NCBI RefSeq assembly: GCF_032062105.1
Contig: NW_026931249.1
Span: 186,001-250,000 of the forward strand
Length of the DNA: 64,000 bases
Direction of reading: 5' to 3'
DNA from: Saccostrea cucullata
Taxonomy: Eukaryota
Shown here: positions 1,610 through 54,728 of the stretch, piece by piece
Position numbering within the stretch: the first letter of the stretch is position 1
Layout of the letters: the number at the start of each line of letters is the position of its first letter
Notes under the pieces: generated by a model
What the model was told of the DNA's origin: nothing
Database searches by the model: none
What the model saw: only the letters and a program-made list of their open reading frames with translations
Made by a program: the position numbers and the translations under genes

Positions 1610-1888
1610 ATGAGGACCTCCGTTGCTGTCGTTCTGGCCGTGATGTGCCTGTCCGGTTCGGTTCTGTCACAGACCGCCACTACAGGAACCAACATCTTCC
1701 AGCAGATTGGCTCCTTCATCAGCTCAAACCCAGCACTGGCTCTGTCCTTCGCCGCCCCATTCTTCGCCGCCAACAGTCTCGGACGTAACCCAAGCAGAAT
1801 CATCGTTCCACCGCCCCCACCTTTCATTGCTCCCTTCCCCATCGCCCAACCCCCAATCATGCCAATTGTTGTCCGTGGACACTATTGA
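1610..1888 (+). CDS. Small secreted Pro-rich protein (92 aa), shell-matrix/mantle-like
   Basis: Signal peptide MRTSVAVVLAVMCLSGSVLS|Q, Pro/Ile/Phe-rich C-half, ends RGHY. TATA at 683-690, non-coding exon donor CAG|gtatgt at 744/745, acceptor at 1603, 3'UTR intron 1903-2212, AATAAA at 2352. Confidence 0.85.
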   Translation: MRTSVAVVLAVMCLSGSVLSQTATTGTNIFQQIGSFISSNPALALSFAAPFFAANSLGRNPSRIIVPPPPPFIAPFPIAQPPIMPIVVRGHY

Positions 1889-4800
1889 AAACATCATAAA
1901 ATGTAAGTATTAATTATTATTAAATCAGTATGATATAACGAAAATTTCATTATATGCACTGTACATGATTTCTATGAAGTTTTCGTCAATTATATACTAA
2001 GGACAAATTCAATATTATATTCTAGTTATTAATTACTGGATGTTCAAAATGACACAATTTTTATAAAATCAACGCCATGTTTTTAGATTGAAGTAACTTG
2101 AACTCGAAATCCAAAGAATGTATACAAAACATACACATTATAATCTTTGTATTTACAATAAACTTTGTTATATTTCCCTCCATCTTGTAACATATATTTT
2201 TTTACGTTACAGGTAGTAATTTATTTCCATCATCGCCATCTATTTATTTCACACCAAAAGAAGAAGCGGTTGATCACGAAGTGAGGACGCACAGAACACA
2301 CACAGAATCATGTCCATTTCATCTTGTCCTTCATCTGTTGTTAATGTTTTCAATAAATATCATCATGAATTTTTTTGTCTTTTCTTTTCTTTATTAACAT
2401 GGATTTTTTAAGGTTCTAGATATCAAAATCTCATATTGATCAGGTGGTGCATAAGGGCATGGCAAGCTTAAATTTTGTAACTTAAGATTACAGAAGCCGG
2501 TATGTGCCAAGTATAGGATAATGTTACAGTTTATTATAGTTTATTAGAAGTTAGTTACTACAGTTATTATTATTATAGTTTTCTATTATTTTCAAATCTT
2601 GATCATTGTATGACACAGTTGATAAAGGATACTTAAATTACAAATAGAAAGAACTCTTATTTATGATCAAGATAGTGACGCAATAATGCCTATAGTACAG
2701 TGTCCGTTTCCTGGCTGTGACTATACCACCGCCGACCTAGATGCAGCAATAGAAATATTTTATCTGGCGTTCGCCAAAAAAATTCTATCTGGCACATTCA
2801 AGCTTCCGTTCGTAGTATAATTTTCAAGCCTCAATATTACATCTATCTGCTATATGCAAAACTACTAATTAATGTCATTTTTTAAAGGAGAAATTAAATG
2901 AACGAAAGGAAACTTTTACAAAACCCCCAAACCCGGCCCTAAAAAATATTAATTTTTACGAAAAGTTCAAGAATGAAGATTTATAAATCTGAGCTTGATT
3001 ACGATATCTTTTCCCTATTTCCTCATATTTCCTTGACGGGAAAATCCAGAAAACCAACAAGTCTAAACTTAGGACAGAAAACCTTCATAGATGCCAACGA
3101 AATAACTTTTGTACTAGCGATCGATGTCACCTGTCGATAATTTATAAAGCAGGCCTCGCCATTAGTAAAGATTGACAGATTTCTTCATATAAATCCCTCC
3201 GACGGTTTGGTCTAACCGATATTGTTCCTCCGTGGTTTATGTAGTGTGTGTGGGGCTCTCCGGTAAGTCTTTCGAACTCCCTGTAGAATGTCTCCCTCAC
3301 CCCCAGCCGCCTGCCTCCCACCCTGTGTTCATAACATGTCGTCTTCAATTAAAACTTCTTTTGTTATTAAAACTTTACATTTATACATTCATGAATTTGT
3401 CTTGTCATTTTTGTTGTTTCTTTAACTCCACTAACTCAGCTGTATAAACTATGTTTTTCACTAACTTTACTAACTGGGCTGTATACAATATGTTTTCACT
3501 AATTTTTGAGTAGATAAAAGTTATTTTGAAGATTTTTGCAAAAATTTATTATTTTATTTTTTAATTTTTAAAAAGAATTCCCATCCTAAGATACTGTAAT
3601 AAAGGTTTATTAAACTTTTAAAATTGATAAAATTAATCATTTGATTTCATGATCTAGCCAAAAAACACACAAAAAAGTCGAGTTTACATGTAGTATACTC
3701 TTTTAAAAGTTTCTTCCCTTATTCAAACGACTAAAAAGGTTTTCTGTGCAGCATAAACATAAATTGCAAGTAAATATCAGGGTACACAAATGCGTGTTTC
3801 CACAAAAAATATAGTAAAACAATGCATATAACATAAATTTTAAGAAAAGGCGTGGAACTTGGGCAATGAAAGCTTTTTTTTTGCAGAAAAACTTTTCTTT
3901 TAAAATAAAAATACGATACATGTGCCCTCTACAAAAAATTAGAATTCTTTAATTCAAATTAGCATATGACAAATTTAATGGAAGAATTCTAATTTATTGT
4001 AAAGAACAAATGTTGAGTGCGCTAAATAACATTTTGAATACGCTATTTTATTTTATTTTTTTAAATATTCAATACATGTATAAAGATAAATGCATTCACA
4101 TCATATAAAGATATGTTAGAGAGACAATGCACATATTATAATTACATGTATTTATGTATTACCCTTTATACAAATAGCAATTCAGTAATGAATGGGACAC
4201 TACATGTTTTTTTTTATTAACGACGTAGCAAGTTTTACATGTTACTTGTTGTATGTTGAACCAGGTCATCCAATGGTAAATTGATCGATGATATAGTATT
4301 AAATTTATAAAAACATATCTTTAAAATTAACATCTTGATGTACCTGTTGAAATTAATGAAAAAAATATTTCAGGAAGTTCATTTTTAACATACGATAATA
4401 ATATTTTTGGCTTTAATCTAAAAAATTACAAGCATTTTGCAAAATTACGGATACGTATTCTACACCTTTAAATTTTGTTAAATTTTGATTGATAACTTCC
4501 CTTTTTTAAATATCTCCGCGCCAAAAGAATTCCATTTGCTTTGATGATGTTTCTTTCCTCCTTTTTTGCGATCCTTTAGTTTGCCCATTTCTCATAATTT
4601 TTTTTTCAACAGGTTTCAATAAAACTAACAATTCTGAATTACCTGGGAATTTCAGAAAAGCACATTTAGCACATAATAAAACTATATTTTTATGTGATTT
4701 CATAAACAAATTAAGTGAAAATATAATAGATCTTATTTTTTTTTTCATTTTGCAAATAATTCATAAATAAAATTATATACTATGTCAAAAATTCCCTCTC

Positions 4801-4964
4801 CTTAAAAAAGAAAGAAATTATTGTTAAAATGTTTGCCAAAACTCCCACACATGCTATTTATATATCTAATTTTAATCAAATACTGATTATCTAATAATTC
4901 ATTAATAAAATCATATGAAATTTTGGATAAAGTTTCGCCTTAATATAAAAATATAAAAATAATG

Positions 4965-5060
4965 CCCTGTTCACACGACGAGTTTAATTCGCAGTAAACT
5001 AATGCGAAGTAAACTAATGCGAATCAAATTAATGCGAATTAAATTGCGTTCACACGACAG
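4965..5060. mobile_element. DNA-transposon end fragment with 14-bp subterminal repeats
   Basis: gccctgttcacacgac start, aaactaatgcgaa-type unit x3, then a second gttcacacgac. Confidence 0.45.
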
Positions 5061-6662: not shown

Positions 6663-6880
6663 TACTTTGAAATCACTAATTTTAGTGGGGGGTTAATTTT
6701 AGTGATTTTCAAGTTATGAGAAGACACACGAATTTATACCAACCACGAAATGCAATTTTTCACATATATATATATATACTACTGAACAATTCTTCAACCA
6801 CGAAATCAAATCCCAATGAACCAATATATTTTCATCACACCAAGAAGTGTGGCCCTTCGAAAATATGTGATTTTACAGTA
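6663..6880. mobile_element. MITE with imperfect terminal inverted repeats
   Basis: tactttgaaatcac at the left end versus gtgattttacagta at the right end. Confidence 0.55.
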
Positions 6881-7148
6881 TTACGCACAGCAATCTTTGT
6901 AGGATCTACGGTTTTGGATTTTAACATTTAGAAGAAATTCTGAAAACAGCCGTTTCAGTCAAATATTTATTTTTGATGCATGTCTTATATTTATTATATG
7001 AATACTCATTGACCCATTAATCTCATCTCCAGTTGTCTTGTATGCATTTTTTTTAAAAAACTTTCTTCTGCTTTTAAAATATGAACACTGAAAACTGAAT
7101 TTAAGATAAATTGTATTTTTTAAGTATTTTTTTTTCGTTTAGACCACC

Positions 7149-8270
7149 ATGTTGACAAAACAATTGTTGCTTGCTCTGATTTTTGCGGCCATGATGGCCC
7201 TCAGTTCAGCGCAGACTACAGCATTGGCCAACATTGGAACAGGGGGCGCTTTTCTGGCAGGACTAGCACTTCCGTTTATTTTTAATCAGTTCCGGCGACC
7301 ACCTCTTCCTGTGGTAGTTCCGTATCCGATACAGACCAACTTCCCACCTCAATTTTTCAACCCGTACCCTCGAGTACCTTTCCTCCCAGGTAAAATCGGC
7401 ATCAATTTACCTTTTATATATAGGATCTTCTTATCTCAAAATATATTAAGAATCATTGATAGTCTGAGAAGAAAGATAACTCTTAACAGGATAAAATTTG
7501 TCTATAGATGATAACTCTACAAATTGGAAAGTCTTTAATGATCATGTCCAGTTTTGACCCACAAGCTTTGCATTTTACTTATAAACTACGTGTTCATTTC
7601 TTTTGGAACATTATAAGCGTTAAAGCAAGATTTTAAACGAGTGAACATAATATTTATAAACCCTATTTTAAAGCTATATTAAGGGTTTAAAAAAAATATA
7701 ACAAAAGATAGAGTGTAGATATTTATTATAAAGTTTTATATTAAAATATAATCTAGGGTAAAATAATTTATATATTTCCCCTGGACATTGTATATGTATA
7801 CACTGATAATTATATTTTTTTCTCCAAAATTGACGATTTAGGTATAATAGTTTTTTTTATTCCATTCAAACCATTCTTTTCATGTTGACAAAATCTATGA
7901 GAATACGGTAAATGATCAAGTTATGTCATAAATTTGAATCCAGATTGGCCTATTTTGAAAAATAAGCAATTTTCTTCTTATCACCATGATCATAGGAAAA
8001 AATAGGATTGATTTACAGAGTTATGCCTCTTTTTCCTAGGTACATGTATTAGATATCATGCATGCCGAATCATTAGATTTTTCTAAACTATTTTCACTGT
8101 ATAGATAGTTTAAATAAACTTGAAAATTATTTTGCACAAAACAGTTTCATTGGTAGTTATTTTGAGGTCGGTCAAAATTGATTATACACATACGTGTACA
8201 ATTGTTTGATTGATTAATTAAATAATGTACTCTGTATTCTGTTGCAGGCGCCCCAGGGTTCTTTGGTTAA
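7149..8270 (+). CDS. Small secreted Pro/Phe-rich protein (87 aa; exons 7149-7389, 8248-8270)
   Basis: Acceptor ag at 7141-7142 followed by accaccATG; signal peptide ...LSSA|Q; phase-1 intron CCAG|gtaaaa...ttgcag|GC gives ...PFLPGAPGFFG*; AATAAA at ~8329. The ORF-track tail is intron read-through. Confidence 0.8.
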
Positions 8271-9443: not shown

Positions 9444-9486
<43 letters not shown>

Positions 9487-15573: not shown

Positions 15574-16407
15574 ATGAAGACTCTGCTTGTAGTCACCTTG
15601 TTCGCATTCTGCAGCGGACACAGAATCCACTTCCGTAACAACTGTAACAAGGAAGTGTGGGTAGGAATTCTGGGAAACACCATCCCAGATCAAGGTGAGA
15701 ACCATCTCTACTTCCATGATCAATTTTAAATGAAATATTTGTCTAAATAATTAGACGCATCTGGGCTAGATAATGTTGATTAACTTAATATGATATGATT
15801 TTAATTAGGGGGCTTTAAGCTTCACCATGGACAAAGTCACAGTGTTTATCTCGGACCTCATTGGTCCGGAAGGATGTGGGGAAGAACCGGATGTGGCGGA
15901 TCTCGTTGTGAGACTGGAGACTGTGGTGGTGGACGACTTCACTGCAGTGGCGCTGGTGGAGTTCCTCCTGTAACTCTCGCCGAAATCACGTTTGACGGTG
16001 CCGGAAACCAAGACTTTTACGATATCAGTTTGGTTGATGGTTTCAATCTACCTCTGAGCATGCGCCCAAGAGCCGGAACAACAGAAGGAGCATCAGGGTC
16101 ATACTATTGCCATTCTGCTGGATGCTATACAGATGTCAACAATATTTGTCCCAGTGGTATGAGAATGTACGGTACTGGCGGAGTTGTGGCCTGCAAGAGC
16201 GCCTGTCTTGCTTTCGGAAGACAAGAGTACTGCTGCAGCGGTGCTCACAACACACCGCAGACGTGTCCAAATTTCTCCTACGCCGAGACCTTTAAGAGAG
16301 CCTGTCCTCAGGCCTATAGTTACGCCTATGATGACCACAAGAGCACATTCACGTGTAGGGGAGCCGGAGGAAGACAGTCAGAATACGACGTTGTATTCTG
16401 TGGTTAA
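15574..16407 (+). CDS. Thaumatin-like protein (PR-5 family), 239 aa; exons 15574-15694, 15809-16407
   Basis: Signal peptide MKTLLVVTLFAFCSG; motifs WSGRMWGRTGC, TLAEIT, DFYDISLVDGFN, FKRACPQAYSYAYDD; 16 Cys in the mature chain; the phase-1 GT-AG intron keeps frame. Confidence 0.95.
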
Positions 16408-17009
16408 ACTATTTCATGCGATAGAACTTTAATTGTACTAAAATTGAATGTAAAATGGAATGTTTTGTTTGAATTGTCTTGATCTGATTAAGAAAACAAT
16501 ATCTTATATAATTTCTTCCTTATGTTATCATGATATTAAAATGTTTTTCTTGTTTAATAAATTTCCATTTTCCCTTTCTTTTGCATTTATAAATGGTATC
16601 AAATCTTATTTCCTGCTTGACTTTTTGCGGTTGCTGGAGTTCGAAAATTGAACACAAATGCTGCCAACACTGCAACTTTTTGATCCGCCCCTAAAATATG
16701 ACTGCCGATAAGGGAAACAAACTCCCAAGTGCTATAGAAGAAGATGGAGAAAGCACGGGTCTTGGGCATAAAAAAATCAAACCTTTGTCAATAAAATCTA
16801 TAACTGTGAATTGTTCATTCCATGGAAAAAATGAATACTTAAATTTGATCTCAGAAACAGCCGATCTTATCATTTGTGTGACAGAAATTCTCCTCCTCGA
16901 AGAAATGTCGAAACTTGATTATCAAACCTGTGGATTTGTTACAGTTATTAGTTCTGAGATTAATGCGACCAAACTCATATCGGTATAACCCTAACCTTAT
17001 CTAGCAAAG

Positions 17010-17190
17010 TTTTTTTGCGTCTCCTATCGGTGAAACCAGAGGGGACTATAGGTTTCTTCTGCGTCTGTCCTTCCGTCTGTCTCTCTAGCTGTCCCGGTGT
17101 CAGTCTGTTCCAGTTGGTTTTCCGCACTTTCTTTCCTAAACGCTTGCAGATAATGAGCTGATTTTTGGCATGTGAGTGAGTCTTGATATT
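17010..17190 (+). mobile_element. HINE-like 5' fragment
   Basis: T-run, ctcctatcggtgaaaccagaggggac hairpin, then a GTCY microsatellite. Confidence 0.5.
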
Positions 17191-17745
17191 TCAAAATATG
17201 TTAAAATTATGCAAAAATTATATTCATGATAGGATAAATATTTGTGAATAGTACATTGTGCATCTATCAATTAATCATATATTCTGATTACTAGTATTAG
17301 TCGTGTTCTGTAACCACAAAAATGATCTATCTACATAGGCGTTGGAACCGGGGGGGGGGGGGGTAGCCAAACCTTTTTTGCAAAGATAGACATAAGAGAC
17401 ATAATAAAGGCATTGAACATTGGGGCGTAGATTAAGCCTCCCATTTTCAGAAGGCACATTGAAGTTTAGGTCAGAAAAGGGTAAGTGGTGTGTTTGGAAA
17501 AAATTTGGTACTGAAAAAATGTTCGATTCTATACCCCCCCCCCCTTCCCAATAGAATTTTCGTATTTGGTTAATGAAAAAATTTCCTTCCTTTGGCTTGT
17601 CAAGTTTTTTTGTAGGTTTTGATTTTTTAATTTCTTCCACAATGATCTATCATTGAAAACCCCAATGAAACACAAACACTGGTAACTTTCTTCCATTTAA
17701 ATTGAGTTTATACATGCATGCACGCATATTTTTTTTCAGATAACC

Positions 17746-18559
17746 ATTAAAACTTTTTTAATTCTGGCAGTAGTCGCTCTATCTAGCGGACACAGAATTC
17801 ACTTCCGGAACAACTGCAACAAAGAAATCTGGGTAGGGATTCTTGGCAGCACTATTCCAGACCAAGGTAAGAAATATTCAATTTGTGTCATATGACTTGA
17901 ATTCAGACACTACATCGACATTCATGTTGAGTAATCCTGATCAATCCATTGTCTATGTAGGAGGGTTTAAGCTTTCCCATGGACAAAGTCACAATTCGTA
18001 CTTTCCGCCTCACTGGTCCGGAAGAATGTGGGGACGAACCGGATGTGGCGGATCTCACTGTGAGACTGGGGACTGGGGTGGTGGACGACTTCATTGTAGT
18101 GGCGCTGGTGGAATCCCTCCTGTTACTCTCGCTGAAATCACATTTGACGGTGCCGGAAACCAAGACTTTTACGACATCAGTTTAGTTGACGGCTTCAATA
18201 TTCCTTTGAGCATGCGCCCAAGGGCCGGAACAACAGAAGGAGCATCAGGGTCATACTATTGCCATTCTGCTGGATGCTATTTAAATGTTAATGCTGTTTG
18301 TCCCAGCGGTATGAGAATATACGGTACTGGCGGAGTTGTGGCCTGTAAGAGCGCTTGTCTTGCCTTCGGAAAACCAGAATACTGCTGCAGCGGTGCTCAC
18401 AATACGCCCCAGACGTGTCCGAATTTCCACTATGCTGATATCTTTAAGAGAGCCTGTCCCCAGGCTTACAGTTACGCCTATGACGACCACAAGAGCACAT
18501 TCACGTGTAGAGGCGCCGGAGGTAGACAGTCTGAATACGATGTTGTGTTCTGCGGTTAA
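17746..18559 (+). pseudogene. Thaumatin-like paralog 2, probable pseudogene (exons 17746-17866, 17961-18559)
   Basis: Colinear with copy 1 and free of stops, but ATT replaces ATG at 17746 and GDC is changed to GDW, removing a conserved Cys. Confidence 0.75.
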
Positions 18560-21172: not shown

Positions 21173-22012
21173 TCGAAGAAATGAGATTGCTACTGCTTGA
21201 AATGTGGCATCGTCTCAAGCCACGGTCTGGAGTCCGCATTATAGCTCTCTCCTAATGGGAGAGGATCGTACATTTTGGCCGTGGTTTGCGACGATGGAAA
21301 TGTGGTTGATTTGAATAAAACAGAGGGACGGATACGGATAACAATATATCCGGGGTATTTCTGTAGAGTGTGGGGGTATAAAAATGATAATATGTTTACT
21401 TTACAAAAAAGTAACTCTTCAGTAAAACTTATGACTTCTTACACGTGTATTGTGCAGGCGCCAAACCTTGGTTTTACATAGTTTCAAGTAAGCAAATTAA
21501 AGTTAAATGCAAGGTTGATTTAATGTTAATCAATTTTTTTTTTCAAACTGGTTTTGGTATATATAGAATGTCAGTAAAAAAAAATTATTTAAATTTCTAA
21601 ACACTTTTAAAATGTTAAATTTTTTATTAAATCTCTCCTTAAATATTTAAAATTCAAGTTTCTTAAAATGATTTTGGTATTTTTAACTTTTGAGTTTTCA
21701 ATCTATCGTTCGTATTGAGAGTTTGAAACAAGAAAATCGAAAGTTCAGTTCTATTTTACGTCATCTGATATGTCAAAATTTACTCCAAACTGCTAAATAG
21801 ACTAAAAACTCTAAAGTATCAAATACCAAGTCCGCTTTGCATAAAAAATTTGAATATTCAGGGTAAAAATCCTATACATGACACGATATGTAGATCTGTT
21901 AATATAATACACAGTTTCCACTCGTTGTTTTAAAATTTTATTTTGTATAATTGACAAACTGATGAGAATGGTTGAAGGTATTAGTTATCTAGATATAGTC
22001 TATACCGATTGT

Positions 22013-22516
22013 CTAATAACGTGGTCTTCGCCGCCTTCGTTGGGGTGTCGGGCGGAAGGATCCTTGATTAAAACCGCCGGAACCAGAGCCGAAGCTCGAA
22101 CGTCGGTTACCTCCGCTACTCCACTGAGATCCGCTAATGAAATCTTGCTGACCAAAACCGGAATCAAATCCGCCATTATCCCATGACGAAATTGAAGAGC
22201 GGGCAAAACTGTTGCCTTGACCGCCTAAACCTCCAAACCTGTCGGAAGAAATTCCATCAAACGTGGAAATTCCTAACTCTGAATTGTCAATCCCGAGGCT
22301 ATTGGCGGAAAGACCCGAACCTAATGCCGGAGCTCCGATGAAATCGGCCTGAAAACCACCGACATCTCCGAGCTGGTTCCCAAAATCAAAACCGTTGTTG
22401 AAATCACGCCCACCGTTGTTGAAGTCACCCCCAAAGAAGTCACTGCCCCCGAACCTGCCGTTTCTCTGGCAGTAGGAGAGCGTCAGGAAGCAAAGAGCTA
22501 TAAATACCCGCAGCAT
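22013..22516 (-). CDS. Secreted Gly/Phe/Asp/Asn-rich protein (167 aa) with basic RRRRRPRY tail, shematrin-like architecture
   Basis: Signal peptide ...LSYC|Q; DFNNG repeats; acceptor directly before the ATG; upstream donor at 22905/22904; TATA at 22965-22971; AATAAA at ~21937-21942. Confidence 0.9.
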   Translation of the reverse strand: MLRVFIALCFLTLSYCQRNGRFGGSDFFGGDFNNGGRDFNNGFDFGNQLGDVGGFQADFIGAPALGSGLSANSLGIDNSELGISTFDGISSDRFGGLGGQGNSFARSSISSWDNGGFDSGFGQQDFISGSQWSSGGNRRSSFGSGSGGFNQGSFRPTPQRRRRRPRY

Positions 22517-24326
22517 CTGTGTATAAAGGAATCAATTCATCAAAATTCAAATTTCAAAATGCTGTGTTTAAGTACAATGTAATTTAAAAAAATTAAATGG
22601 CTACATGTACAATCATACACACAAAAAGTTAAAAATGCATTGTAGTAATATATGTTATACTAGTATCAGATTATGTTCCTTTTATCAAAGTGAAAAAGGG
22701 TGTAAAACGACCATTATCAAAATCAATTCTTTTTTCACTTTTTTTAAATTTAATTTTTTTTCAAAATATTGTTTACAACTTTTTTTAAGGTTCATCATTA
22801 TATATAAAGATTGTTTTTTAAATTTATTTTTTGATAATTTTAAAGAAAATGTAGGGGGGAAAATTATAAAACGAATTATATATATAATTTTCAAATAAAC
22901 TTACCTTGGAAGTGAACTACACTGACAGAAGTCAACGGTATTGTGGAAAAAATCCCAATAAAGGTTTTATACCATTAACAACTATAAACAGCGAGTTGCA
23001 CTTCGCTCATCTGTTAACGAGGCGAACTGATTGATGACAAGTCGGAGTAAACACTTAAATGGGCTTCCATAAAACGCCCATTTTCCTTCTGTTGACCTGC
23101 AAGCAAAAAATCTGCAGAATTCTATTTCTGAAGTAATTATCGTAAACTATACTCACATAAATAATAAACAATGATGAATGGACTCGCCGACAAAGCGGTA
23201 CATCGTGTTCGGATGTTAATATTGTCGTAAAATGGAGGACAGGAAATCAGTTTTTCTGCATTTAACACGTGTTTGAATAATGTTCCTTATCAATATTGTT
23301 GTGAAATATCAGTAGGTCAGTTTTATGTTAATGAGTTGGTTTTAATTGTAATTAATTTTGTGTGTTACACAGCGACTTACGGGTATGAAAAAAATAACGA
23401 TAAATTATATTTTGGAATAATTCTAATTAATATATTTGCGATTACATGTTCTACTGAAGAGGATTAAAAATCCCTTGAGGGTTTTTTCTTCCTTTCTTTG
23501 GTCACAAATATTTGATTTCCATGCATTTTGATGTCTACATTTGCATAATTATACAACTTCTAAAATAGGAAATTATTACTTGGAAATCGGATATTGTTAG
23601 ACCAAAATTCAATAAAAGTAATGTTGCGAATACTTTTGTTTAGAGGTATGTAAAATAAAACCTGTTATTGGAAAAAAATATCTTAATTTGCCTAAAAATG
23701 CGTTAAGAACTTTCTAGTACAACTTATAATTATGTTTTTTTAATATTCCCCGAATTTATTCTACAATTATTATTATTTCTTTTGAACACAGCAAGCGGGA
23801 ACATAGCATCACTGTTGAAAGGTGGGAGGGGCAGCCATAGGAAAATAAAATTCAACCTACCTGAAAATTTTTAAACAAGAAAAAAGTATTATAATCATAA
23901 TTATTTCATAGAGGAATGGGGGTGATAACCTGGAAAGAACTGTGGGAAGACTGGTAGCCCCCTTCCATCTTGATATTACGTGACTGGCAAAATTAAAATC
24001 ATATCTGACTTGAAAAGGAGGCATACATTGCCACTGACAATGGTTTTCTTGGGGAGGTTCAAAATTTTCAATGTCATCGTCAACGACTCGTATATACAGC
24101 ATTTAAATGTATTACCAAAATTATCTTTATACTTTACTTACTTTTTCTTTTTTACTTCATATAATATCTGTCCTCTGAAAATTCAATCCTGGTAAAAACT
24201 GGCATAGAAACTCATAGATTAAGCCTGTTTCCTCATGTACTTTGTGAAAGTTGTAAGCTTTTTCTGCCATTGGAGTTGAATTTTAATATTGTGTGTTTTA
24301 AGGAAGGATCATTTGATGGGCATACA

Positions 24327-30294: not shown

Positions 30295-31638
30295 ATGTCT
30301 GAGACCATCTTCTTTTGTCTGCTTGCTAGTGTCTGGGGCGTGGCCTTAGGCGGGGATAAAATGTACACCGAACAGTTTGTTATAACTCTAATGGAGAAGA
30401 TAGATCGATTGGAGAAGGAATTTTCAATATTTAAGGAGGAAACTACCACCAAATTACAAGAATTCTAAACCAGATTGGAACATTCGGACCAAATGGTGAA
30501 GGACCTAGGAGATAGACTGCGGCTGTCTGACAAGAAGGTGGGTGAACTCACGAGAGATTTGGAGCACTCTGGAGTTGTTTTACAGGGACTGGTGAAGCAG
30601 CGCCATGATAAATCTGACAAGGAGTACCCCTTCCCCCCAGATGAACAGAGAACGAACAATACCAACCTAAATTATAACAAAGTACAGAAAAATGTTGTGC
30701 CTGGAGGAATAAGGGAGTCGCAAGGTATGTTACACACCATCATGTTTCTTGAATGCCGAACTAGCTGAAGAAAGTTTGTATCTTTATCAGTTACAAACTT
30801 CTTAATTATAATAGAGATACAAAATATAAAAAAAAATTTTAATGGCAAAAAAAAAACCTTTCAAAAAAATGGCAAAAAAAAAACAAACAAACAACAACAA
30901 CATTTTTAAAAAAAAAAAAATGTGTTTAAACTAAGACACATAAGTCACTTTAAGTGGAAAAAAATAATGATAGAAATGTATTTAAAAATTAAGAAGGAAA
31001 GAATTTAAAATTGTATGCATTCAGATTTCAGATACGTTTTTGAATTTACTTTCACTACAATCCATTTGGTTACTAGTACTACATGTAGAAAAAAGCTTAT
31101 TACAGTAATTAATAAAATAGCACTTATAGCAGCTTAGTGGTAAGTAAATGCAACAAATGTTTAGTGACTGTCAATTCAGTACATCTAAGTAAAAATACAT
31201 TGAAAAATGTTTAATACTTTCAGATCGTTTCCAAAGACTTTTAATTCCGGCGACACAACTTCCTTCGGTTGCTTTTTATGCACACGCAGCTGGTCATCAA
31301 AACGGGCTTGGCGCGGGACAGACCATCAAATACCCCACCGTCGTTACCAACGTTGGCAATGGATTCGATCCCAAAGTTGGAATATTTCGAGCACCCGTAG
31401 CAGGTGTTTACTTCTTTACTACAACACTGATCAGTGATCGTGGAGAGACTGTCCGAAGCACCATCGTCCATAATAATCAAAATATGGCATACGTTTTTGC
31501 GGGAAATGAAGGAACTCACGGATCCGGATCAAACTCTGTCGTGCTGCATTTGATGTCTGGACACTTGTTCACAACACAAACTCCCATGTGTTTGCTGATT
31601 CCTGGTGCACATTTTCTGGATTTCTGATCTCAAATTAA
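30295..31638 (+). pseudogene. C1q-domain-containing gene copy 1 (pseudogene)
   Basis: CAA changed to TAA at 30466-30468; intron 30725-31223; ~13-nt frameshift deletion near 31550; gC1q motifs AFYAH, GIFRAPVAGVYFF and FSGFLI. Confidence 0.9.
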
Positions 31639-32199
31639 AGTATTTGAAAATGAAATCTGTAATAGAAAGTCTATTCATTCCAAAGATACTTGCTCTTTGA
31701 ATTATAGATATTTTTAAGTAAAGAAAACGCAATAAAATATTGTTAAGGTGTGTTAGTGATGAAGCAATAAAGATTAATGATATGTGAGGGTGTGCGTTGT
31801 GTGTGTGTATGCACTTCGACTACATGGGGCCCGAGTAGGCCTAATTAACTCAGGCTCCTGGTAATCACATAGTTTACGGTATTAAAACGAAAAATTAAAC
31901 GTTTATACGTTAAAAAAAAATTAAAAGCTTTTCAATTTAATTTTACATTGCAAATATGTTGTATATGTATAATATATATCTAGTGGAATATTTTATAAAA
32001 TATCAAGTTTCAAATCTACATATCAACAAAGAACACAGTAATTTCTTATCAGTGTGTATGGGCTTGGTTACATACCACTTACTATCATTATCAAAGACCT
32101 GAAAACTAGTATTTTGTCAGAATAATTAAGGGAGAACTGAATAAATGGAAGAAAATGTAAAGAATTTATATATTTTAATATTTGTACGTGCTTGCATAT

Positions 32200-32445
32200 G
32201 ACTATGGGTGATGACAGATGGTATTCTAAGCAATCTGTAACGAATCTAATTCAAAAACAGGAATTTGTTCAGTATAAGAAGAAAATTAGCGCAAATAAAA
32301 TTTTAGGCCAAACTTCAGCAGTTGGGTAAGAGTGTGGATGAACTAGATGAAACACTAAAGCAAGGACAAACTGGTATTCAAATATGGCCATGTTTATACA
32401 ATGCATGGTGTACTTTTTTCTGGATTTCTAATCTCAAATTAAAAT
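32200..32445 (+). pseudogene. Remnant of an additional C1qDC 3' end
   Basis: gcatggtgtactttttctggatttctaatctcaaattaa and its downstream flank match the end of the copy at 35476. Confidence 0.65.
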
Positions 32446-32569
32446 ATTTTGAAACGTTATGTGAGTATCTCGTTTATTACCTGAAAAAAAGATGAACATA
32501 AAGAATATAATGGTCGCCTTCATAAGTCCTTAATAAATACATTAAAAATTGTTTATACTAGGGATAAAT

Positions 32570-33372
32570 AACGGGACCCTGGAATACAAAGATCGGTCGG
32601 ATCATGTCGAATGGGGAGTAAGGATTCTCTATTAACCGGATCACAGCCGTAGGCTATTGATCCGGTCAAAGGTTAATCTAGTCAAATTATAGCCTAACAA
32701 TTTGTATGTTAATCGATTCCGATAGGCACTTAAATTGTGCTCCATTTATAGGCGACCTATTTTGATATTCCTATGAAGCAGAATTTATTCAAAAACTTGC
32801 ACACAAGAAAAAGGAAAGACATTTACTTACTGTGGTCCTCAACTCGAGATTTACTAATATCGACGATGTTCATGTATTATAAAATAAAAAAAAATGGAAC
32901 TTGAAAAAAAAACACCACAGACTCTACCATATTTGTTTCAGATTCAGTTATCTTTTCCATGTTCAACTCTTCTGAATTGTGAAGAAATACAGTATTTCGC
33001 TACCACCTGCATATGATGTTTTTTAAAATTTCTGACTTACTAGCATTAATTCGATTCTCAAGAGCAAGTTCCAAGGATAATAAATTTTTAAACCGAGGAA
33101 TGTTACTAGCAACATAATTGTTAAAAGCAACCTTGTTAAAAGCCTGAATTCGTATATTCTACGGTCAGTATAAGAATTATTCGGATATAAAATCCATTAT
33201 TTTGTCTGTATATTTTTTGGTTGATTTGTTTCTTATGTTCAAGGTGAAGGTAATGACCAGTGATCGATCTATAAAAAAAATCAGTAAACAATACAAATAT
33301 GTGAAGGGGATATAAAACACGGACCCCTGACAGTTCCAAAGGAGGTGGGATCAGGCGTCTAAGAGGAGTAAG
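32570..33372. mobile_element. Decayed Penelope-like retroelement relic (duplicated at ~35600-36400 and ~41540-41790)
   Basis: ccgataggcac...tgtgctccatttataggcgaccta...tatgaagcagaatttattcaaaaactt translates roughly as PxG..CAP..ADL..YEAEFIQKL; flanked by the terminal motif seen at 61357-61432. Confidence 0.65.
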
Positions 33373-33913
33373 TTCAATTGTAAATCATTTTCAAAACTCA
33401 TATACAAATACTAGTAAATAAATAAAGTTAATTGCTACCTTGTTTATTCAATCCATGGCTCAAGTGATTTCGTTTTTTGTAAGATAGCAAAAACATTCGG
33501 ATTTCGTAAGGGGAGCAAGGTTAGTTAACTTGATGTTGTTTGCCAATTTTGACACGTTTGCATGCATATATGCACTATACAGTTGATGACCAACAATACG
33601 TTTATTTCCAAACCCAAAATTAAGGAAAATTACAGAGAGACTGGCTCCCTCGACAAATAATTTAAAGACAAACAAAGAAATATACATGAATTAAAGAAAT
33701 ATAGAAAAGCTTCTGTTTTTTAAAAAACATAGATTTACACAAGCACATATTAAATTCATTTGAAAGGAAAACGATTTTTCTTTGTCGATAATTTGCCATA
33801 TTTAGAAGCAGTAGGGATTAAGTGCTTATCAGTTGACATGGATATGATAAACAGTTTTAATAGTGCCCATCTTGATCTCGACAATAAAATTATAGCAAAG
33901 AAAGGGGACCATA

Positions 33914-35476
33914 ATGAACATGTTGGGAGCGATCTTCCTTTGTCTGCTTGCTAGTGTCTGGGGTGTGGCCTTAGGCGGGGATAAAATGTACACCGCACAG
34001 TTTGTTATAACTCTAATGGAGAAGATAGATCGCTTGGAGAAAGAATTCTCCCTGTTTAAGGAGGAAACTGCCACCAAATTACAGGAATTCCAAACCAAAT
34101 TGGAACATTCTGACCAAACGGTGAAGGAGCTAGAAGATAGACTGCAGCTGTCTGACAAGAAGGTGGGCGAACTCACGCGAGATTTGGAGCACTCTGAGTT
34201 TGTTTTACTGGAGCTGGTGAAGCAGCGCCAGGGTGGATCTAATAAGGATTACCCATTCCCTCCAGATGAACAGAAAACGAACGATACCAACCCAAATTAT
34301 AACGAAATACAGAAAGCTGCTGTTCCAATAGAAATAAAGCAGTCACAAGGTATGTTAGCTTCATTTACGTCCAACTGGTTTCTCGAAAGCCATACAAGCA
34401 GAGGAAAGCTTGTTTCTTTAAACTTCATAATTGGGATAAAATTCAAAAAAAAAAAAAATTATCAAGACTTTAAAAATATTGGCATTCAAATGTTCAACAC
34501 CTACATGTAGTAAAATGAGTTTCAAATTAAGAAATTATATATATCCCCTCGCTCAAAAAATCAAAGGTCGAACATTAAAAATCAAGTCTGGACCTTAGAA
34601 AAAGAGGATTCAGTAGAAGAAAATTCAAAAACCTCTGGAGATTAGTAGTTCATTGCATCAAAGTTCATTTCCTGCGTGACGCAGTGATAAATCTAGATTT
34701 GCTTAGTAAGGAATTTATTCTTACCTTGCGGGTTGGGACGTGGAGACGGGTCTTTTGGATGAGACCATATAAACTTAGGTCTCGTGTTGCAGAAGTTGCT
34801 TGCACGAAAAAGATCCCTCAGTGCTCAATGGCCCTTAGTTCAAAGAGATCAAAATGCAGCTCTCCACTGGCAAGTGATGGCGTCTCCACATGAGTGAAAA
34901 ATTCTCGAGAGGAACGTTAAACAACTAACAAAAAACAAAAACAAGCCGGCAAAAGTTTTATCGATTATGTATTTATAATGTATAACACAATAAAAGTTGA
35001 GTAAAACGTAAGGTCACAATGCTTTTTCAGGTATTTCAAAGAGACTTTCAATTTCTGAGGCTGCAACAGCAACACCGAAAGTCCATTCCTCGATTGCTTT
35101 TTATGCGCATGCATCTGGCAGCCAGACAGTTATAGGTATTGGACACACTATATACTACAAAACTGACATCACCAACGCTGGCAACGGGTTCGATTCCAAA
35201 ACTGGCGTTTTTCGGGCACCTGTCGCAGGCTATTATTACTTCAGCTCAACGTTGGTCAGTGGAGCTGCAGAAGCTATTATGGCCAGTATCGTCCATAACA
35301 GCAATGATGTGGCAAATATTTTCGCGGGAAATGAACAGACGTTTGGATCTGGGTCGAACTCTGTTGTGCTGTACCTTAATATTGATGATAATGTCTGGAT
35401 TCGGAGTCAAAATATGAATCCCCATTCTTATGTAGAAGCATGGTGTACTTTCTCAGGATTTCTTATCTCAAATTAA
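33914..35476 (+). CDS. C1q-domain-containing protein (signal peptide, coiled coil, gC1q), 293 aa; exons 33914-34349, 35031-35476
   Basis: Phase-1 intron AAG|gtatgt...tttcag|GT gives an uninterrupted frame: IAFYAH...GNGFDSKTGVFRAPVAGYYYFS...GSNSVVLYL...VWI...FSGFLISN*. Confidence 0.92.
34670..34945 (+). mobile_element. SINE-like element in the C1qDC intron
   Basis: gcacgaaaaagatccctcagtgctcaatggccct...gtctccacatgagtgaaaattctc matches 43814-44058; (AAAC)-rich tail. Confidence 0.7.
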
Positions 35477-36945
35477 AATATTTTGGAACGTTATGTTAGT
35501 ATTTCTATTATTTCCTGAAAAAAGATTGACTTATATTAACGAATAGTGGTAGTCTTCATCAGTCCTTGAACATTACAAATTGTTTAAAATAGGGATAGAC
35601 CACGGAGCCCTGGAATACAAAGACGGGATCATGTCGTAGGGGTGTTGGGGGGATGGGGGGGGGGGGGGGGTAAGCATTCTCTGTTAATCGGATCACAGTC
35701 ACAGTGCATTGATCAGGTGAAAGGGATATTCTAGTCAAAATTATAGCCTAACAATTGGTATGAAACGAAGTTTAATTTAATCGATTCCGATAGGTATTAA
35801 TTGTTCTCAATTTATATACCAGTCGACCTACATGTATATTAATATTTATATGAAGCAGTATCTGTTCAATAACTTACATACGAGAAAAAGAAAATACTTG
35901 TTGTGGCCCTTAACTCAAGATTTAGTAATTTCAACGATGTACTATAAAATAAAAATACCACAGACAACAGAGACTCTGCCATGTTTGTTTCATGTTTAGT
36001 CATGCAGCGTTTCCATCTTCAACTATTTCGCTATCACCTGCATACAATGTTTTTCTTCCTACCGTATTCGATTCTCAAGAACAAGTTTCAACGATAATAA
36101 ATTTTAAACCAATGAATGCTGCTAGCCGAAAAGTTAATACTATAGGAATTTCAACAACCTCATTTAAAGCCAGAATTTGTATATTCTATGGTGCGTATAA
36201 TAAAATTAATCGGATATAAAAACCCATAATTTTTTTTTCGTGTTTTAGCTGATTTGTTTCCTATGTATTAGGTGAAGGTTATGACCAGTGATCGATCTAT
36301 AAAAAAATCAGTAAGCAATACAAATACGTGAAGGGGACAAAAAACAAGGACCTCTGACAAATCCAGAGGTGGTGGGATCAGGCGGTTAAGAAGAGTAGGT
36401 TCAATTGTAAAATCAATTTCAAAACTCAAATACAAATAAATAAATAAAGTTAATTGCTACCTTGTTTATCCTCCTCGTGGCTCAAGTGATTTCAAGCAAG
36501 TGATTTCGTTTTTTATAAGATAGCAAAACATTTGGATTTCGTAAGGGGAGCAAGGTTAATTTACATGATGTTTGCCAATTTTGACAACTATGCATGCATA
36601 TATGGACTATACAATTGATGAACAACAATACGTTTATTTCCAAACCCAAAATTGAGGAAACTTCAGAGAGACTGACTCCCTTGACAACTAATTTAATGAC
36701 AAAACAAAAAAAATATACATGTATTAAAGAAATATAGTAAAAGCTTCTGTTTAAAGCATAGATTTACACAAGCACATACATTCATTTTAAAGGGAAACGA
36801 TTTTTCTGTGTCGATAATTTGCCATATTTAGAAGCAGTAGGAATTAAGTGCTTATCAGTTGACATGGATATCATAATCAGTTTTAATAGTGTCCATTTTG
36901 ATCTCGATAATAAAATTATAGCAAAGAAAGGTGACCGTACTGAAC

Positions 36946-38245
36946 ATGTTAGGGGCAATCTTCTTTTGTCTGCTTGCTAGTGTCTGGGGCGTGGCCTTAG
37001 GCGGGGACAAAATGTACACTGAACACTTTGTTATGTCGCTGGTGGAGAAGATAGATCGCTTGGAGAAGGAATTCTCCCTATTTAAGGTTCATAAACCCTT
37101 TGCTTATTCATATAAAATGTTTCTTTAACTTTTATAATTTTCCAAAAGAAAAGTACATGTATAGAATAGAATTCCAAACCAAATTGGAACATTCTGACCA
37201 AACGGTGAAGGAGCTAGGAGATAGACTGCAGCTGTCTGACAAGAAGGTGGACGAACTCATGAGGGATTTGGAGCACTCTGAGGTTGTTTTACAGGGGCTG
37301 GTGAAGCAGCGCCAGGGTGGATCTGATAGGGAGTACCCATTCCCTCCAGATGAACAGAAAACGAACAATATCAACCCAAATCATAACAAAGTACAGAGAG
37401 TTGCTGCTCCAGTAGAAATAAAGAATTTGCAAGGTACGTTGCTTTCATACGCCCATCCGTCATGTTACTCGAAAGCCGTACAAGGAGAATAAAGTTTGCA
37501 TCTTTGAACTATTATTTATAATAGGGATAAAAAGTTTTTAAAATTTATAGACTTCAATAAATGTGGCACCCAAATTTACAACAGCTCTTTGTAGTAAAAA
37601 ACGTTTTGAATTAAGACACATAAGTCACTTTTGAGAAGAGAGAAAATAATGCCAAAGAATTTGAATGCATACATTGAGAGTATAGTAGTTACGTTTTAGA
37701 ATATATTGATTTATAAAAAATTAAATGTTATTCATTATATGTATTAAGTAAAAGAAATGACGATTTGTGACGATTGAGTTAGTATTACTGATTAAAAATA
37801 CAGCAAGACTTTTTAAAACTTTCAGATCGTTTCCAAAGACTTTTAATTCCGGCGACACAATTTCCACAACTTTCTTCGGTTCTGATCATCAAACCGGGCT
37901 TGGCACGGGACAGACTATCAAATATCCCACGGTCATTACCAACGTGGCAATGGATTCGATCCCAAAGTCGGAACATTTCGAGCACCTTTGGCAGGTGTCT
38001 ACTTCTTTACTACAACACTTATCAGTGGTGCAGGAGAGACTGTCCGAAGTAGCATCGTCCGTGACAATCATGATATGGCACACGTTTTTGCGGGGAATGA
38101 AGGAACTTTTGGATCCGGATCAAATTCTGTTGTGCTGCACTTGGACGCCAACGATGATGTCTGGACACGTGTTTCCTATGACACAAACGCTCATGTTTAT
38201 GCTGATTCCTGGTGCACATTTTCTGGATTTTTGATCTCAAATTAA
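36946..38245 (+). pseudogene. C1qDC copy 3 (pseudogene)
   Basis: AT-rich ~82-nt replacement with an in-frame stop at 37087-37168; exon 2 (from 37826) is split over three frames by ~19-nt and 1-nt deletions. Confidence 0.88.
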
Positions 38246-39369
38246 AATATTTGAAAATGAAATCTGTAATATAGTCTTTTCATAATACAAAAGATATTGA
38301 CTAAAATGTGATATATTAAAAAAATTTTTTTTAAGATATAACAACGTAGAAAAACTGTGTGTTATTAAAAACACTGATTTGTATGATAATGTTTGTGTGT
38401 TGTGTGCGATTAATTGTGATGTGTGTGTGAATTTACATATAAGTGCTTATCAGTTGACATGAATATACTGTATGATAAAAAGTTTTAATATATTACTGGC
38501 TACTTGTATATCTTAGCAAGGAAAGGTTACCATAAAGAACTTTTGAACATTTTCTGCTTTCTAGTTTCTGCAACCGTGGCCAATTTCGGGGATAAATTTT
38601 GCACAAAACTTTGTTATGTCGCTGGTAGAGAAGGGAGAACAAAAATTGTGAATAAGGATCCCTGCCACCAAATTACAAGAATTCCAAACTAAATTGGATC
38701 ATTGGACCAAACGGTGAAGGGCCAAAACCAGCTGTCTGAAAATTAATGCAATCTTTAAAAACACTATCTGTTTTACAGCGGCTGGACATCAAGCAGTCAA
38801 GCTGGGTTTGCATGATTGTAATCAGCATTGAGTCCAGATTACCAAAATTGTGAAATTCATGGCCCAAATCATAACAAAGTACAGAAAGGTGCTGTTCCAA
38901 TAGAAATAAAGGATTCGCAAGGTATGCTGGTTCATACACGTCAATCATGTTTCAAGCCATACAAGCAGAGGAAAGCTTGTTTCTTTAAACTATTACTAGT
39001 AATTCATAATAGAGATAAAAATTTCCAAGAAATGATCAGGACTTTAAAAATATTGGCATTCAAATGTATAACAGCAACAGGAAATAAAATGCGTTTTAAA
39101 CTAAGAAATTATATAGTCAAAAATCAAATGAATTCATTAAAAATCTTCTTCACTGAAAAAGAGGATTTATTAAAGAAAGGTCAAAAGTACATAGTTATTC
39201 ATTGCAACAAAGTTCATTGCCTGCTACCAAAATTGTCTAGATTTTAGTGGCTTTCTTGCGTCGCGGGTTCTGGTGATGGGGGGGTTCTTTGATTATATAG
39301 TGAAAATACGTGTCGCAGTATTCTTTGAAAAAGATTCCTTACTGCTCAATAACCCTAAGTATTAAATAA

Positions 39370-53100: not shown

Positions 53101-53534
53101 ATTAAATAAATAAAACAGAATATACATAACATCAAAAAGGGGTTTCGAATAATAAAAAGAAGCCATCTTTTGTATTCTCGTCCAGAGTTCTCGCAGAAGT
53201 CTCGGCTGTTTGGAGATTTCTTGTGGACAGCTTCACTTTGCTTACCTGTATAGAGTAAATGTATAGTGTAACGTCTATCAATAAAAGAAAAAAAATATAG
53301 TCATAGAGAAAAATGTACCATGATCTTGAATTAGCCTGAAAGAAAAATAACTACTTGGAAAGAAAAGTAACTACTTGGTCATTTAAAATAGAATAACCGT
53401 ATATACGCGCCTATAAGTCGTTTTTAGTCAATATTTGGTCCAAAACGCTATGTCCGACTTATAGGCGAGTCATAAAAAAAGATTTTTTTTTGTCGAAAAT
53501 ACAAGCTTTAAACGATTTCCACTTACCAAATAAT

Positions 53535-54728
53535 TTAATATCCAGAGCCGATACGTCTGATAGGTCTCATTGGCATATTCTTAGGATAATTAGAAATTCT
53601 ACGATAAGGTCTTTGTAAGAATGAGACCGGACTTCGGATTCCATAACTAATGTGTGGTCTTTTGATGGGTAAAATGCTGGGTCGCCTATTCTTGAATATT
53701 GGACCCCCCTTTCTATAACGGAGTGGATACGATTTGCCGAATTTTGGTCCATGTCCAAGAGATCTTCTTTTACCGAATCCCTTTCCAATACCACCTCCGA
53801 TTCCTAAACCACCTCCAATGTGTTTTCTGCCGCCGCCGAATCTTAATCCACCTCTGATACCCTTTCCTCCTCCAATACCAATACCACTACCAATGCCTTT
53901 TCCAAATCCTATTCCCCGTCCTCCAGATCCCCACTTTTTGCCACCTCCAATTCCTTTTCCAAATCCACCACCAAGTCCAAAGTCTCTGTCTTTACCCAAA
54001 GCAGGACCTAAGGATCCGCCAATATTTCCTCCACCGATTCCTACATCAAATCCGTTATCCCGTCCGAAACCAGCACCACCAACAAAAGAGCCACCGTCGA
54101 TGCCTCTGCCTAAACCGATTCCTCCGTCAATTCCTCCTATGTCACCACCTCTTCCGCCATCGAATCCCCCAATTATACCGTCTTTTCCTCCAAACGATGG
54201 TCTACCTATAATTCCTCCCTTTCCGCCAAGACCCGGAGCTCCTCCTCCAATAAAGGATCCATCCACACCAGAGTTCACATCGAAACCAGCATCGAAACCA
54301 CCGCCAATGTCACCTCCAAGACCGGAATCCAGACCGCCACCGACTCCGATATTGGAGTCCAAACTCAGTCCTCTTGTGGCTAACGCAACACCGCCCAAGT
54401 CGTTCTGGAATCCATTGTCGAATCCAGTATCAACCAGTCCGACGTCTGTATTGAATCCAGAGTTTAAGTCGTTCACAACGCCTCCGTCAAATCCAAACTC
54501 CAATCTTGGCTCAACAAAACTGTTGAGATCGTTCCCGAACCCGACATTTGCGTTCTGTTCGAACCCGACAGGGTTGATGGAACCTCTTCCAGCGCCCCCT
54601 ACATCCAGGCGCCCACCGTTCCTTCTGTAGGCATCACACCCGAGGGGTCCCGGGTCTCCGGGCTCACACGGTAGGATGTGAAGTCCATAGCAGAAGGAAG
54701 CGCTCAGGAGAACCAGAAAAGCCTGCAT
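53535..54728 (-). CDS. Secreted Gly-rich protein (397 aa), acidic N-part and basic C-part, shematrin/Gly-rich matrix-like
   Basis: Signal peptide MQAFLVLLSASFCYG; acceptor at 54730; donor at 55017/55016; TATA at 55066-55074; 3'UTR intron 53526-53246; AATAAA at ~53098-53103; ends RRIGSGY. Confidence 0.92.
   Translation of the reverse strand: MQAFLVLLSASFCYGLHILPCEPGDPGPLGCDAYRRNGGRLDVGGAGRGSINPVGFEQNANVGFGNDLNSFVEPRLEFGFDGGVVNDLNSGFNTDVGLVDTGFDNGFQNDLGGVALATRGLSLDSNIGVGGGLDSGLGGDIGGGFDAGFDVNSGVDGSFIGGGAPGLGGKGGIIGRPSFGGKDGIIGGFDGGRGGDIGGIDGGIGLGRGIDGGSFVGGAGFGRDNGFDVGIGGGNIGGSLGPALGKDRDFGLGGGFGKGIGGGKKWGSGGRGIGFGKGIGSGIGIGGGKGIRGGLRFGGGRKHIGGGLGIGGGIGKGFGKRRSLGHGPKFGKSYPLRYRKGGPIFKNRRPSILPIKRPHISYGIRSPVSFLQRPYRRISNYPKNMPMRPIRRIGSGY

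What the first reader, a model, noticed from the sequence alone, without database searches (positions are those of the whole stretch)
1610..54728. Cluster of six secreted low-complexity proteins sharing one design: candidate shell-matrix/cement locus
Seen: the genes at 1610, 7149, 22516, 27661, 42951 and 54728 all encode signal peptides and lack folded domains. Five end in Tyr after basic residues (RGHY, RRRRRPRY, RRRSGY, KRKLGYY, RRIGSGY). Each has a splice acceptor 0-6 nt before the ATG, and five have a TATA box plus a short upstream exon. Their cores differ (Pro, GFD, DKYPV, PVY, Gly). Known: pearl-oyster shematrins are Gly-rich matrix proteins with basic Tyr-ending tails. Inference: this is an old, diverged, co-regulated family building one extracellular material, with defence genes (TLP, C1qDC) interleaved.
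Basis: partly seen in the sequence, partly recalled or inferred. Interest (0 to 1): 0.85.

Follow-up and report, generated by a model that had tools for sequence, protein, structure and literature searches.

The report
Oyster secreted structural-protein gene cluster
A rock oyster has about twelve neighbouring genes for secreted, unstructured proteins, with blocks of them kept in order in other oysters; they are mostly unrelated to each other and probably supply the organic framework of the shell, but no tissue or protein data confirm that yet.

Summary
The six genes are real (Saccostrea cucullata). All have signal peptides, no folded domain and an acceptor 0-6 nt before the ATG. Five end in Tyr. 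They are the right-hand half of a cluster of about 12 coding units over 81 kb, between a C2-domain gene and ACYP. Blocks at both ends keep their order in Crassostrea/Magallana. RNA from a related oyster confirms one 5' intron and finds g3 and g4 together.

'One family, one design' is not supported. g1 belongs to a four-member Pro-rich family lying mostly upstream. g2-g6 are single-copy and not alignable. The acceptor-at-ATG layout also occurs in the thaumatin gene, and no shared promoter motif convincingly beat the null.

What g3-g6 share is an acidic N-third and a basic, Tyr-ended C-third. In g6 this polarity and a two-Cys N-terminal motif persist in Mytilus. An upstream pair looks like mutually exclusive exons, each coding nearly a whole protein.

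Best reading: mantle-secreted shell or periostracum framework proteins, shematrin-like in design but not shematrins. The tissue is unproven. The scan reported similar clusters elsewhere in this genome, but not this locus.

The parts
683..744 (+). g1 TATA box (683) and short non-coding first exon ending at donor 745 (predicted)
1610..1888 (+). g1: 92-aa secreted Pro-rich protein (signal peptide, conserved amphipathic segment, poly-Pro, ends RGHY); member of a 4-unit family whose other members lie upstream (contig 182228-, 166388+, 165862+)
7149..7389 (+). g2 main coding exon: secreted Pro/aromatic-rich protein, single copy; relation to the g1 family not significant (hhalign probability 1.9)
8248..8270 (+). 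g2 probable terminal coding micro-exon (phase 1; ends GAPGFFG, no Tyr), inferred from sequence only
15574..18559 (+). two interleaved thaumatin-like genes; the first has the same TATA/short exon/acceptor-near-ATG layout
22013..22516 (-). g3: 167-aa Gly/Ser/Phe/Asp-rich secreted protein with acidic start and basic tail ending RRRRRPRY; single copy; transcribed in a related oyster
22905..23021 (-). g3 non-coding first exon (RNA-confirmed joint 22905 to 22516); TATA at 22971
26015..27661 (-). g4: 548-aa secreted protein; N-terminal Cys pair, acidic third, about 30 DKYP(V) repeats (26593-27067), Lys/Tyr/Arg-rich tail ending RRRSGY; single copy; transcribed in a related oyster
27872..27938 (-). g4 TATA box (27938) and short first exon (predicted)
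30295..41399 (+). four interleaved C1qDC copies, some frameshifted
42580..42951 (-). g5: 123-aa secreted protein; CPGC motif, acidic then basic, ends KLGYY; orthologue (42%) 5 kb downstream of g6 in M. gigas
45729..46961 (-). tyrosine-recombinase (Crypton-like, DUF3504) ORF inserted between g5 and g6; not part of the system
53535..54728 (-). g6: 397-aa Gly-rich secreted protein; N-terminal LHILPCEPG.PGPLGCD motif conserved in Mytilus; net charge -11/-1/+29 by thirds; ends RRIGSGY
55017..55400 (-). g6 first exon, TATA (55074) and a promoter block conserved in S. echinata and M. gigas
55916..60582 (+). acylphosphatase (ACYP), head-to-head with g6; right-hand landmark of the cluster, same in S. 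echinata and M. gigas

Best explanation
The locus is an old oyster gene complex of about 12 secreted, intrinsically disordered structural proteins of at least two unrelated designs, most likely secreted by the mantle into the organic framework of the shell (periostracum or prismatic-layer matrix). Class A (g3, g4, g5, g6 and upstream u0, u3) are block polyampholytes with an acidic N-third, a Gly- or repeat-rich middle and a Lys/Arg-rich tail that usually carries the Tyr. Class B (g1, u1, u2, u5; perhaps g2) are short proteins with an amphipathic segment and poly-Pro. SHOWN: genes, secretion signals, charge polarity and its conservation to mussels, block synteny, and transcription of g3/g4. INFERRED: opposite-charge blocks let the chains condense with each other or with acidic matrix and Ca2+ after secretion; the N-terminal Cys pair (g4-g6) forms a small disulfide knot for assembly or sorting; tail Tyr/Lys are cross-linked by tyrosinases or peroxidases encoded elsewhere. 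New members arise easily because nearly the whole protein sits in one exon that begins at a splice acceptor; the u1/u2 pair appears to show such an exon duplicated under one promoter.
For: Enrichment over flanks and simulations. Charge thirds, conserved in g6 orthologues of Saccostrea, Magallana and Mytilus although the middles do not align. 17 of 23 listed RNA differences in g3/g4 fall at third codon positions, p about 8e-5. Synteny. Basic Tyr-ended tails are the signature of shematrins and KRMPs, which are shell proteins (PMC3896809). Shell-protein genes are tandemly clustered in Pinctada (PMC4759782). Runs of consecutive low-complexity genes are prominent among M. gigas mantle-expressed genes (supplement of PMC11464482). 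The C. virginica u1 orthologue LOC111127865 is expressed in 14-day larvae and differs 9-fold between pCO2 treatments (PMC9498863).
Against: No tissue label for any RNA run. No peptide or accession of these genes was found in the shell-proteome supplements searched, though those files may hold no sequences. No tyrosinase match on this contig among those scored. No convincing shared promoter motif. Co-expression rests on two genes and four runs. Collinearity of the two halves in one other genome was not shown. g3 and g6 have under 2% Tyr, little for tanning substrates.
Confidence: 0.55

Rival explanations
1. The proteins build another extracellular material (hinge ligament, gill or mantle cuticle, mucus, egg or larval coat), or the cluster serves several materials and is held together by linkage rather than shared regulation.
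For: Two unrelated designs; no shared promoter motif; low-level presence in an unlabelled RNA run. Gly/Tyr/basic low-complexity proteins occur in many secreted materials (general knowledge).
Against: The tail signature matches known shell proteins; the larval acidification response of one member; g3 and g4 co-occur. None is Met-rich, unlike known ligament proteins (from memory).
Confidence: 0.22
2. Adhesive or cement locus: the Lys-Tyr-rich g4 and the basic tails act as DOPA adhesives of the larval foot or the adult cementing mantle lobe.
For: g4 has 42 KY dipeptides, 10.9% Tyr and about 30 DKYP(V) repeats, which recalls byssal proteins (resemblance from memory). Charge-complementary chains fit coacervate adhesives.
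Against: g6 relatives exist in non-cementing Mytilus. The u1 orthologue is expressed in 114-129-um larvae, before the pediveliger stage (stage size from general knowledge). Most members are Tyr-poor.
Confidence: 0.12
3. All members descend from one ancestral gene.
For: Shared gene layout, terminal Tyr in 7 of 12, similar charge polarity in six. g4 and g6 share PC(D/E)PxDP right after the signal peptide (hhalign probability 53, mostly signal peptide).
Against: No significant alignment outside the g1 family. Own-genome profile searches with g2, g3, g5, g6 and the g6 alignment return only the query gene. The layout is shared with the unrelated thaumatin gene. Fast evolution could have erased homology, so this is unproven rather than excluded; it is most plausible for g4-g6.
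Confidence: 0.12
4. Defence locus: cationic or Pro-rich secreted peptides acting with the interleaved thaumatin and C1qDC genes.
For: Thaumatin-like and C1qDC genes lie inside the cluster; the tails are cationic and Arg-rich.
Against: Members are single-copy and conserved (g6 N-terminal motif nearly invariant to mussels; u0-u4 63-77% to C. virginica), unlike fast-turnover immune effectors. C1qDC was not seen beside g5 in M. gigas.
Confidence: 0.08

Closest known systems
Shematrins (Pinctada; Yano 2006, as described in PMC3896809 and PMC4759782)
   Same: Secreted, Gly-rich low-complexity chains with a basic Tyr-ended C-terminus, in tandem gene clusters. u3 (upstream) and g6/g3 come closest.
   Different: No sequence hit. 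No RKKKY-type pentapeptide. g6 and g3 use GGF/GIGG/GFD rather than GnY repeats (Tyr under 2%). Strong acidic N-block. Shematrin homologues were reported absent from C. gigas (PMC4759782). The cluster mixes unrelated designs.
KRMPs (lysine-rich matrix proteins)
   Same: Small secreted proteins with basic and Tyr-bearing regions and an R/K..Y end.
   Different: No Lys/Trp/Cys N-terminal domain; here the basic block is C-terminal.
Runs of low-complexity mantle genes in Magallana gigas (e.g. LOC105323064-66, LOC105324951-63, LOC105330462-66 in the supplement of PMC11464482)
   Same: Neighbouring secreted low-complexity genes with arbitrary database names. [quoted passage not shown]
   Different: Different loci; this one was not found in that list or in any paper searched.
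Lys-Tyr repeat byssal foot proteins (Mytilus mfp-1, Dreissena fp; from memory)
   Same: g4's tandem K-Y-P repeats.
   Different: No homologue found for g4; each repeat carries an Asp and is net neutral; oysters have no adult byssus; DOPA untested.

Membership tests
Shematrin | Signal peptide and no folded domain | tested here: met
Shematrin | Gly-rich GnY repeat domain | tested here: not met
   g3 and g6 are 23-32% Gly but 0.7-1.8% Tyr; g1, g2, g4 and g5 are not Gly-rich. Only upstream u3 has a GY-rich last exon.
Shematrin | C-terminal RKKKY/RRKKY/RRRKY-type signature (PMC3896809) | tested here: not met
   Tails are basic and end in Tyr in g3-g6, but none matches the signature; nearest is g3 RRRRRPRY.
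Shematrin | Sequence homology to Pinctada shematrins | tested here: not met
   Searches with g6, g4 and the g1 profile returned only oyster and Mytilus uncharacterised proteins. g2, g3 and g5 were not searched against the large databases.
Shematrin | Mantle-edge expression and presence in shell matrix | not testable with these tools
   RNA runs carry no tissue label.
KRMP | Lys/Trp/Cys-rich domain right after the signal peptide | tested here: not met
   Mature N-termini are acidic or neutral, with 0-2 Cys.
DOPA adhesive (byssal or cement) proteins | Tandem Lys-Tyr-rich repeats | tested here: met
   g4 only: about 30 repeats, 42 KY.
DOPA adhesive (byssal or cement) proteins | Tyr converted to DOPA; made in foot or cement gland | not testable with these tools
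   Needs protein and tissue data.
   Only g1/u1/u2/u5 align; g4-g6 N-termini borderline.
Co-regulated gene complex | Correlated expression and shared cis-elements | tested here: inconclusive
   g3 and g4 co-occur in 3 runs and are both absent in 1; best shared k-mer empirical p 0.13, 0.21 and 0.027 for k = 6, 7, 8.
Co-regulated gene complex | Conserved linkage across species | tested here: met
   u0-u4 in C. virginica and ACYP-g6-g5 in M. gigas; the middle (g1-g4) and the join of the two blocks were not tested.

The most novel reading that the evidence does not exclude
The locus is a co-regulated mollusc analogue of the vertebrate epidermal differentiation complex: unrelated secreted polyampholytes gathered under shared control to build one shell layer. 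It grows by duplication of a 'whole protein in one exon' cassette, first as a mutually exclusive exon (u1/u2) and later as a separate gene. A two-Cys N-terminal motif kept from mussels to oysters marks a conserved assembly or sorting step in periostracum or shell formation.
Probability: 0.2. Interest if true: 0.7.

Novelty: new member of a known kind. Interest (0 to 1): 0.42.

Why it matters
Oyster shell and periostracum framework proteins are mostly unannotated, and four of these six exact ORFs are not in a 15-billion-protein collection (one search tested five of the six plus the recombinase; g1, g4 and g5 were absent, g2 was not tested). A bounded, syntenic parts list with a conserved charge-block grammar and one motif conserved to mussels gives specific targets for proteomics, in situ work and recombinant condensation tests. 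The kind of locus is already known in bivalves and recurs elsewhere in this genome, so the surprise is moderate.

Tried and rejected
Searches that gave nothing usable:
- Whole-protein homologue search for g4 returned nothing. The tool only sees proteins of 0.55-1.75 times the query length, and repeats dominate the words, so this is not evidence of absence.
- Atlas searches gave no usable hit.
- The metagenome scan with the g6 motif gave two weak hits. The one checked was a bacterial polyketide-synthase-like ORF, a chance match.
- Own-genome matches to g4 at about 20% identity are compositional or come from its antisense frame.
- Literature searches for accessions and short motifs found only LOC111127865 in one table.
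- Three shell or mantle supplements had no matching peptide or accession; one paper had none held.

Leads considered and dropped:
- M. gigas LOC105319423 (mantle, flat valve) as a cluster member. Accession neighbours place XP_019918888 near LOC10531835x and not near it, so I did not use it.
- TGTCAA(TA) and octamer sites stand out in the g6 and u1 promoter footprints, but they were picked after the fact and are not convincingly shared.

Limits observed:
- The g4 repeat array was left out of the read-laying stretch from the start.
Full report
SETTING. The window is contig C13386:186,001-250,000 of a 1.17-Gb assembly. A paralogue from the same 460,241-nt contig is named Saccostrea cucullata LOC134231962. 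I also fetched 100 kb on each side.

OBSERVATION. All six ORFs exist, have a hydrophobic signal region, and have an AG 0-6 nt before the ATG. Pfam finds no domain over cut-off, and the Atlas models of g4 and g6 are disordered. Five end in Tyr. g2 probably splices to a micro-exon at 8248 and ends in Gly. A TATA box with a donor 56-65 nt downstream is clear for g1, g3, g4 and g6; g5 has the TATA box without a consensus donor, and g2 has neither nearby. RNA from a related oyster (species label coded) joins 22905 to 22516, so the g3 intron ends exactly at the ATG. g3 and g4 are both present in three runs and both absent in a fourth, which comes from the same study as one positive run; tissues are not given, and absence in assembled contigs is weak evidence. 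Seventeen of 23 listed differences in g3/g4 are at third codon positions, so both are constrained as protein. A hand-tuned filter finds 10 such ORFs in contig 160-241 kb, 1 spurious one in 183 kb of flank and none in twenty simulated 81-kb sequences.

THE CLUSTER IS LARGER. Six more coding units lie upstream: u0 (contig 160,292+; Trp/Asp then Arg/His/Tyr), u1 (165,862+), u2 (166,388+), u3 (170,585+; acidic DDGFF block, Gly block, KKY block, and a GY-rich last exon ending in Tyr), u4 (172,528-; Gly/Pro/Phe) and u5 (182,228-; 78% identical to g1). A C2-domain (synaptotagmin-like) gene bounds the left side and ACYP the right. Seven of the twelve end in Tyr.

CONSERVATION. In C. virginica, u0, u1, u2, u3 and u4 occur in the same order and orientation at 63-77% identity. 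The u1-u2 pair is adjacent in two further oyster data sets. ACYP is head-to-head with g6 in S. echinata and M. gigas, and a g5 orthologue (42%) lies 5 kb past g6 in M. gigas. I could not reach orthologues of g1-g4, so collinearity of the whole interval is inferred from its two ends. g6 also has relatives in Mytilus coruscus (CAC5394136.1) and a second, unnamed lineage that I take for a mussel. They share the motif LHILPCEPG.PGPLGCD right after the signal peptide, and little else aligns. No other cluster member was seen within 10 kb of them.

NOT ONE FAMILY. Against composition shuffles only u1, u2, u5 and g1 align with each other (z 11-35). Among g2-g6 nothing is convincing (one short u0-g2 match of score 41 is unexplained). 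Own-genome searches return only the query for g2, g3, g5, g6 and the g6 profile. g4 and g6 share PC(D/E)PxDP after the signal peptide and g5 has CPGC; the profile comparison is borderline. The gene layout is no family mark: the thaumatin gene has the same TATA, short exon and acceptor 6 nt before the ATG, and a flanking TRIM gene starts at AG|ATG. Ten promoters share no k-mer that convincingly beats random sets, although the g6 and u1 promoters are each well conserved between species.

WHAT IS SHARED. u0, u3, g3, g4, g5 and g6 have an acidic first third and a basic later part. Net charge by thirds is -6/0/+23 for g4, -6/0/+13 for g5, -11/-1/+29 for g6 and -3/-3/+7 for g3. The g6 pattern holds in M. 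gigas (-16/+4/+30) and in the two Mytilus-type relatives (-5/0/+27 and -10/+2/+24), with most Tyr in the last third, although their middles are different repeats. Charge grammar, not sequence, appears to be what is conserved. The g1 family is a separate design: an amphipathic segment followed by poly-Pro.

A HINT ON HOW MEMBERS ARISE. The RefSeq protein for u1 ends in a micro-exon at contig 166,733 that lies beyond u2, so u2 sits inside u1's last intron. Both exons begin at an acceptor just before an ATG and end in a phase-1 G|GTAAG donor. No TATA box lies between them, and a u1-to-u2 splice would stop after three codons. Both are conserved as coding in other oysters. The simplest reading is a tandemly duplicated, mutually exclusive exon, each copy coding signal peptide and mature chain. 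This is inferred; no junction reads were seen.

FUNCTION. Direct evidence is thin. The C. virginica u1 orthologue LOC111127865 is expressed in 14-day larvae of 114-129 um and differs between pCO2 treatments, 105 against 11.5 counts (PMC9498863). That is before the cementing stage (general knowledge). Basic Tyr-ended tails define shematrins and KRMPs (PMC3896809). Shell-protein genes cluster in Pinctada, and shematrin homologues were reported absent from C. gigas (PMC4759782). Shematrin-like but unalignable proteins are mantle-specific in zebra mussel (PMC9210306). Runs of neighbouring low-complexity genes are prominent among M. gigas mantle genes (PMC11464482 supplement). I therefore favour mantle-secreted framework proteins that condense through opposite charges and are cross-linked through Tyr/Lys by enzymes encoded elsewhere; no tyrosinase match was listed on this contig. 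Confidence 0.55. Another material or mixed use: 0.22. Cement: 0.12, most plausible for g4. Defence: 0.08.

COMPARISON AND NOVELTY. The proteins work like shematrins or KRMPs by design but fail membership on repeat type, terminal signature and homology. No paper searched describes this locus or the g6 motif. The scan has noted several comparable clusters on other pieces of this genome; these are unchecked notes and show only that the kind recurs. Verdict: a real, larger than reported, syntenic cluster and a new member of a known kind. Interest 0.42.

Noticed in passing
G000:C13386:165,862-166,762 (L012/L013), upstream of the window: u1 and u2 look like tandem mutually exclusive exons, each coding a signal peptide and mature protein, sharing a first exon and a terminal micro-exon; conserved in other oysters.
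   Followed up: partly
G000:C13386:170,585-171,305 (L013): u3 is the most shematrin-like member: acidic DDGFF block, Gly block, KKY block and a GY-rich last exon ending in Tyr, all conserved in C. virginica.
   Followed up: partly
window:54520-54728 (-): The mature N-terminal motif of g6 with two Cys is nearly invariant between oysters and Mytilus while the rest of the protein has turned over; no Pfam family covers it.
   Followed up: partly
window:17736-18559 (+): The second thaumatin-like copy (92% identical in its main exon) has ATT where the first has its ATG and Trp at one conserved Cys; possibly decaying or started from another exon.
   Followed up: no
window:45729-46961 (-): Intact tyrosine-recombinase/DUF3504 (Crypton-like) ORF between g5 and g6.
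   Followed up: no
window:30295-41399 (+): Four C1qDC copies, at least two with frameshifts in the C1q exon; none seen within 4.5 kb beyond g5 in M. gigas.
   Followed up: partly
window:55131-55372 and G000:C13386:164,763-165,067: The promoters of g6 and u1/u2 are conserved across genera and both contain an invariant TGTCAATA; u1 also has an octamer site beside it. Sharing across the whole cluster was not significant.
   Followed up: partly
window:42951-43240 (-): The M. gigas g5 orthologue has no ATG after its acceptor, so its start codon may lie in the first exon; an in-frame ATG also lies downstream of the g5 TATA box here.
   Followed up: no
L054:10001-10909, L057:10001-10900: The Mytilus-type relatives of g6 carry F(L/I/V)DP repeats in the acidic part and GYPK repeats in the basic part; a link to the scan's 'FDPN' cluster was not tested.
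   Followed up: no
window:23900-25520 and 21200-21380: Stretches with high, unstranded read depth from many other loci: transcribed interspersed repeats between g3 and g4.
   Followed up: no
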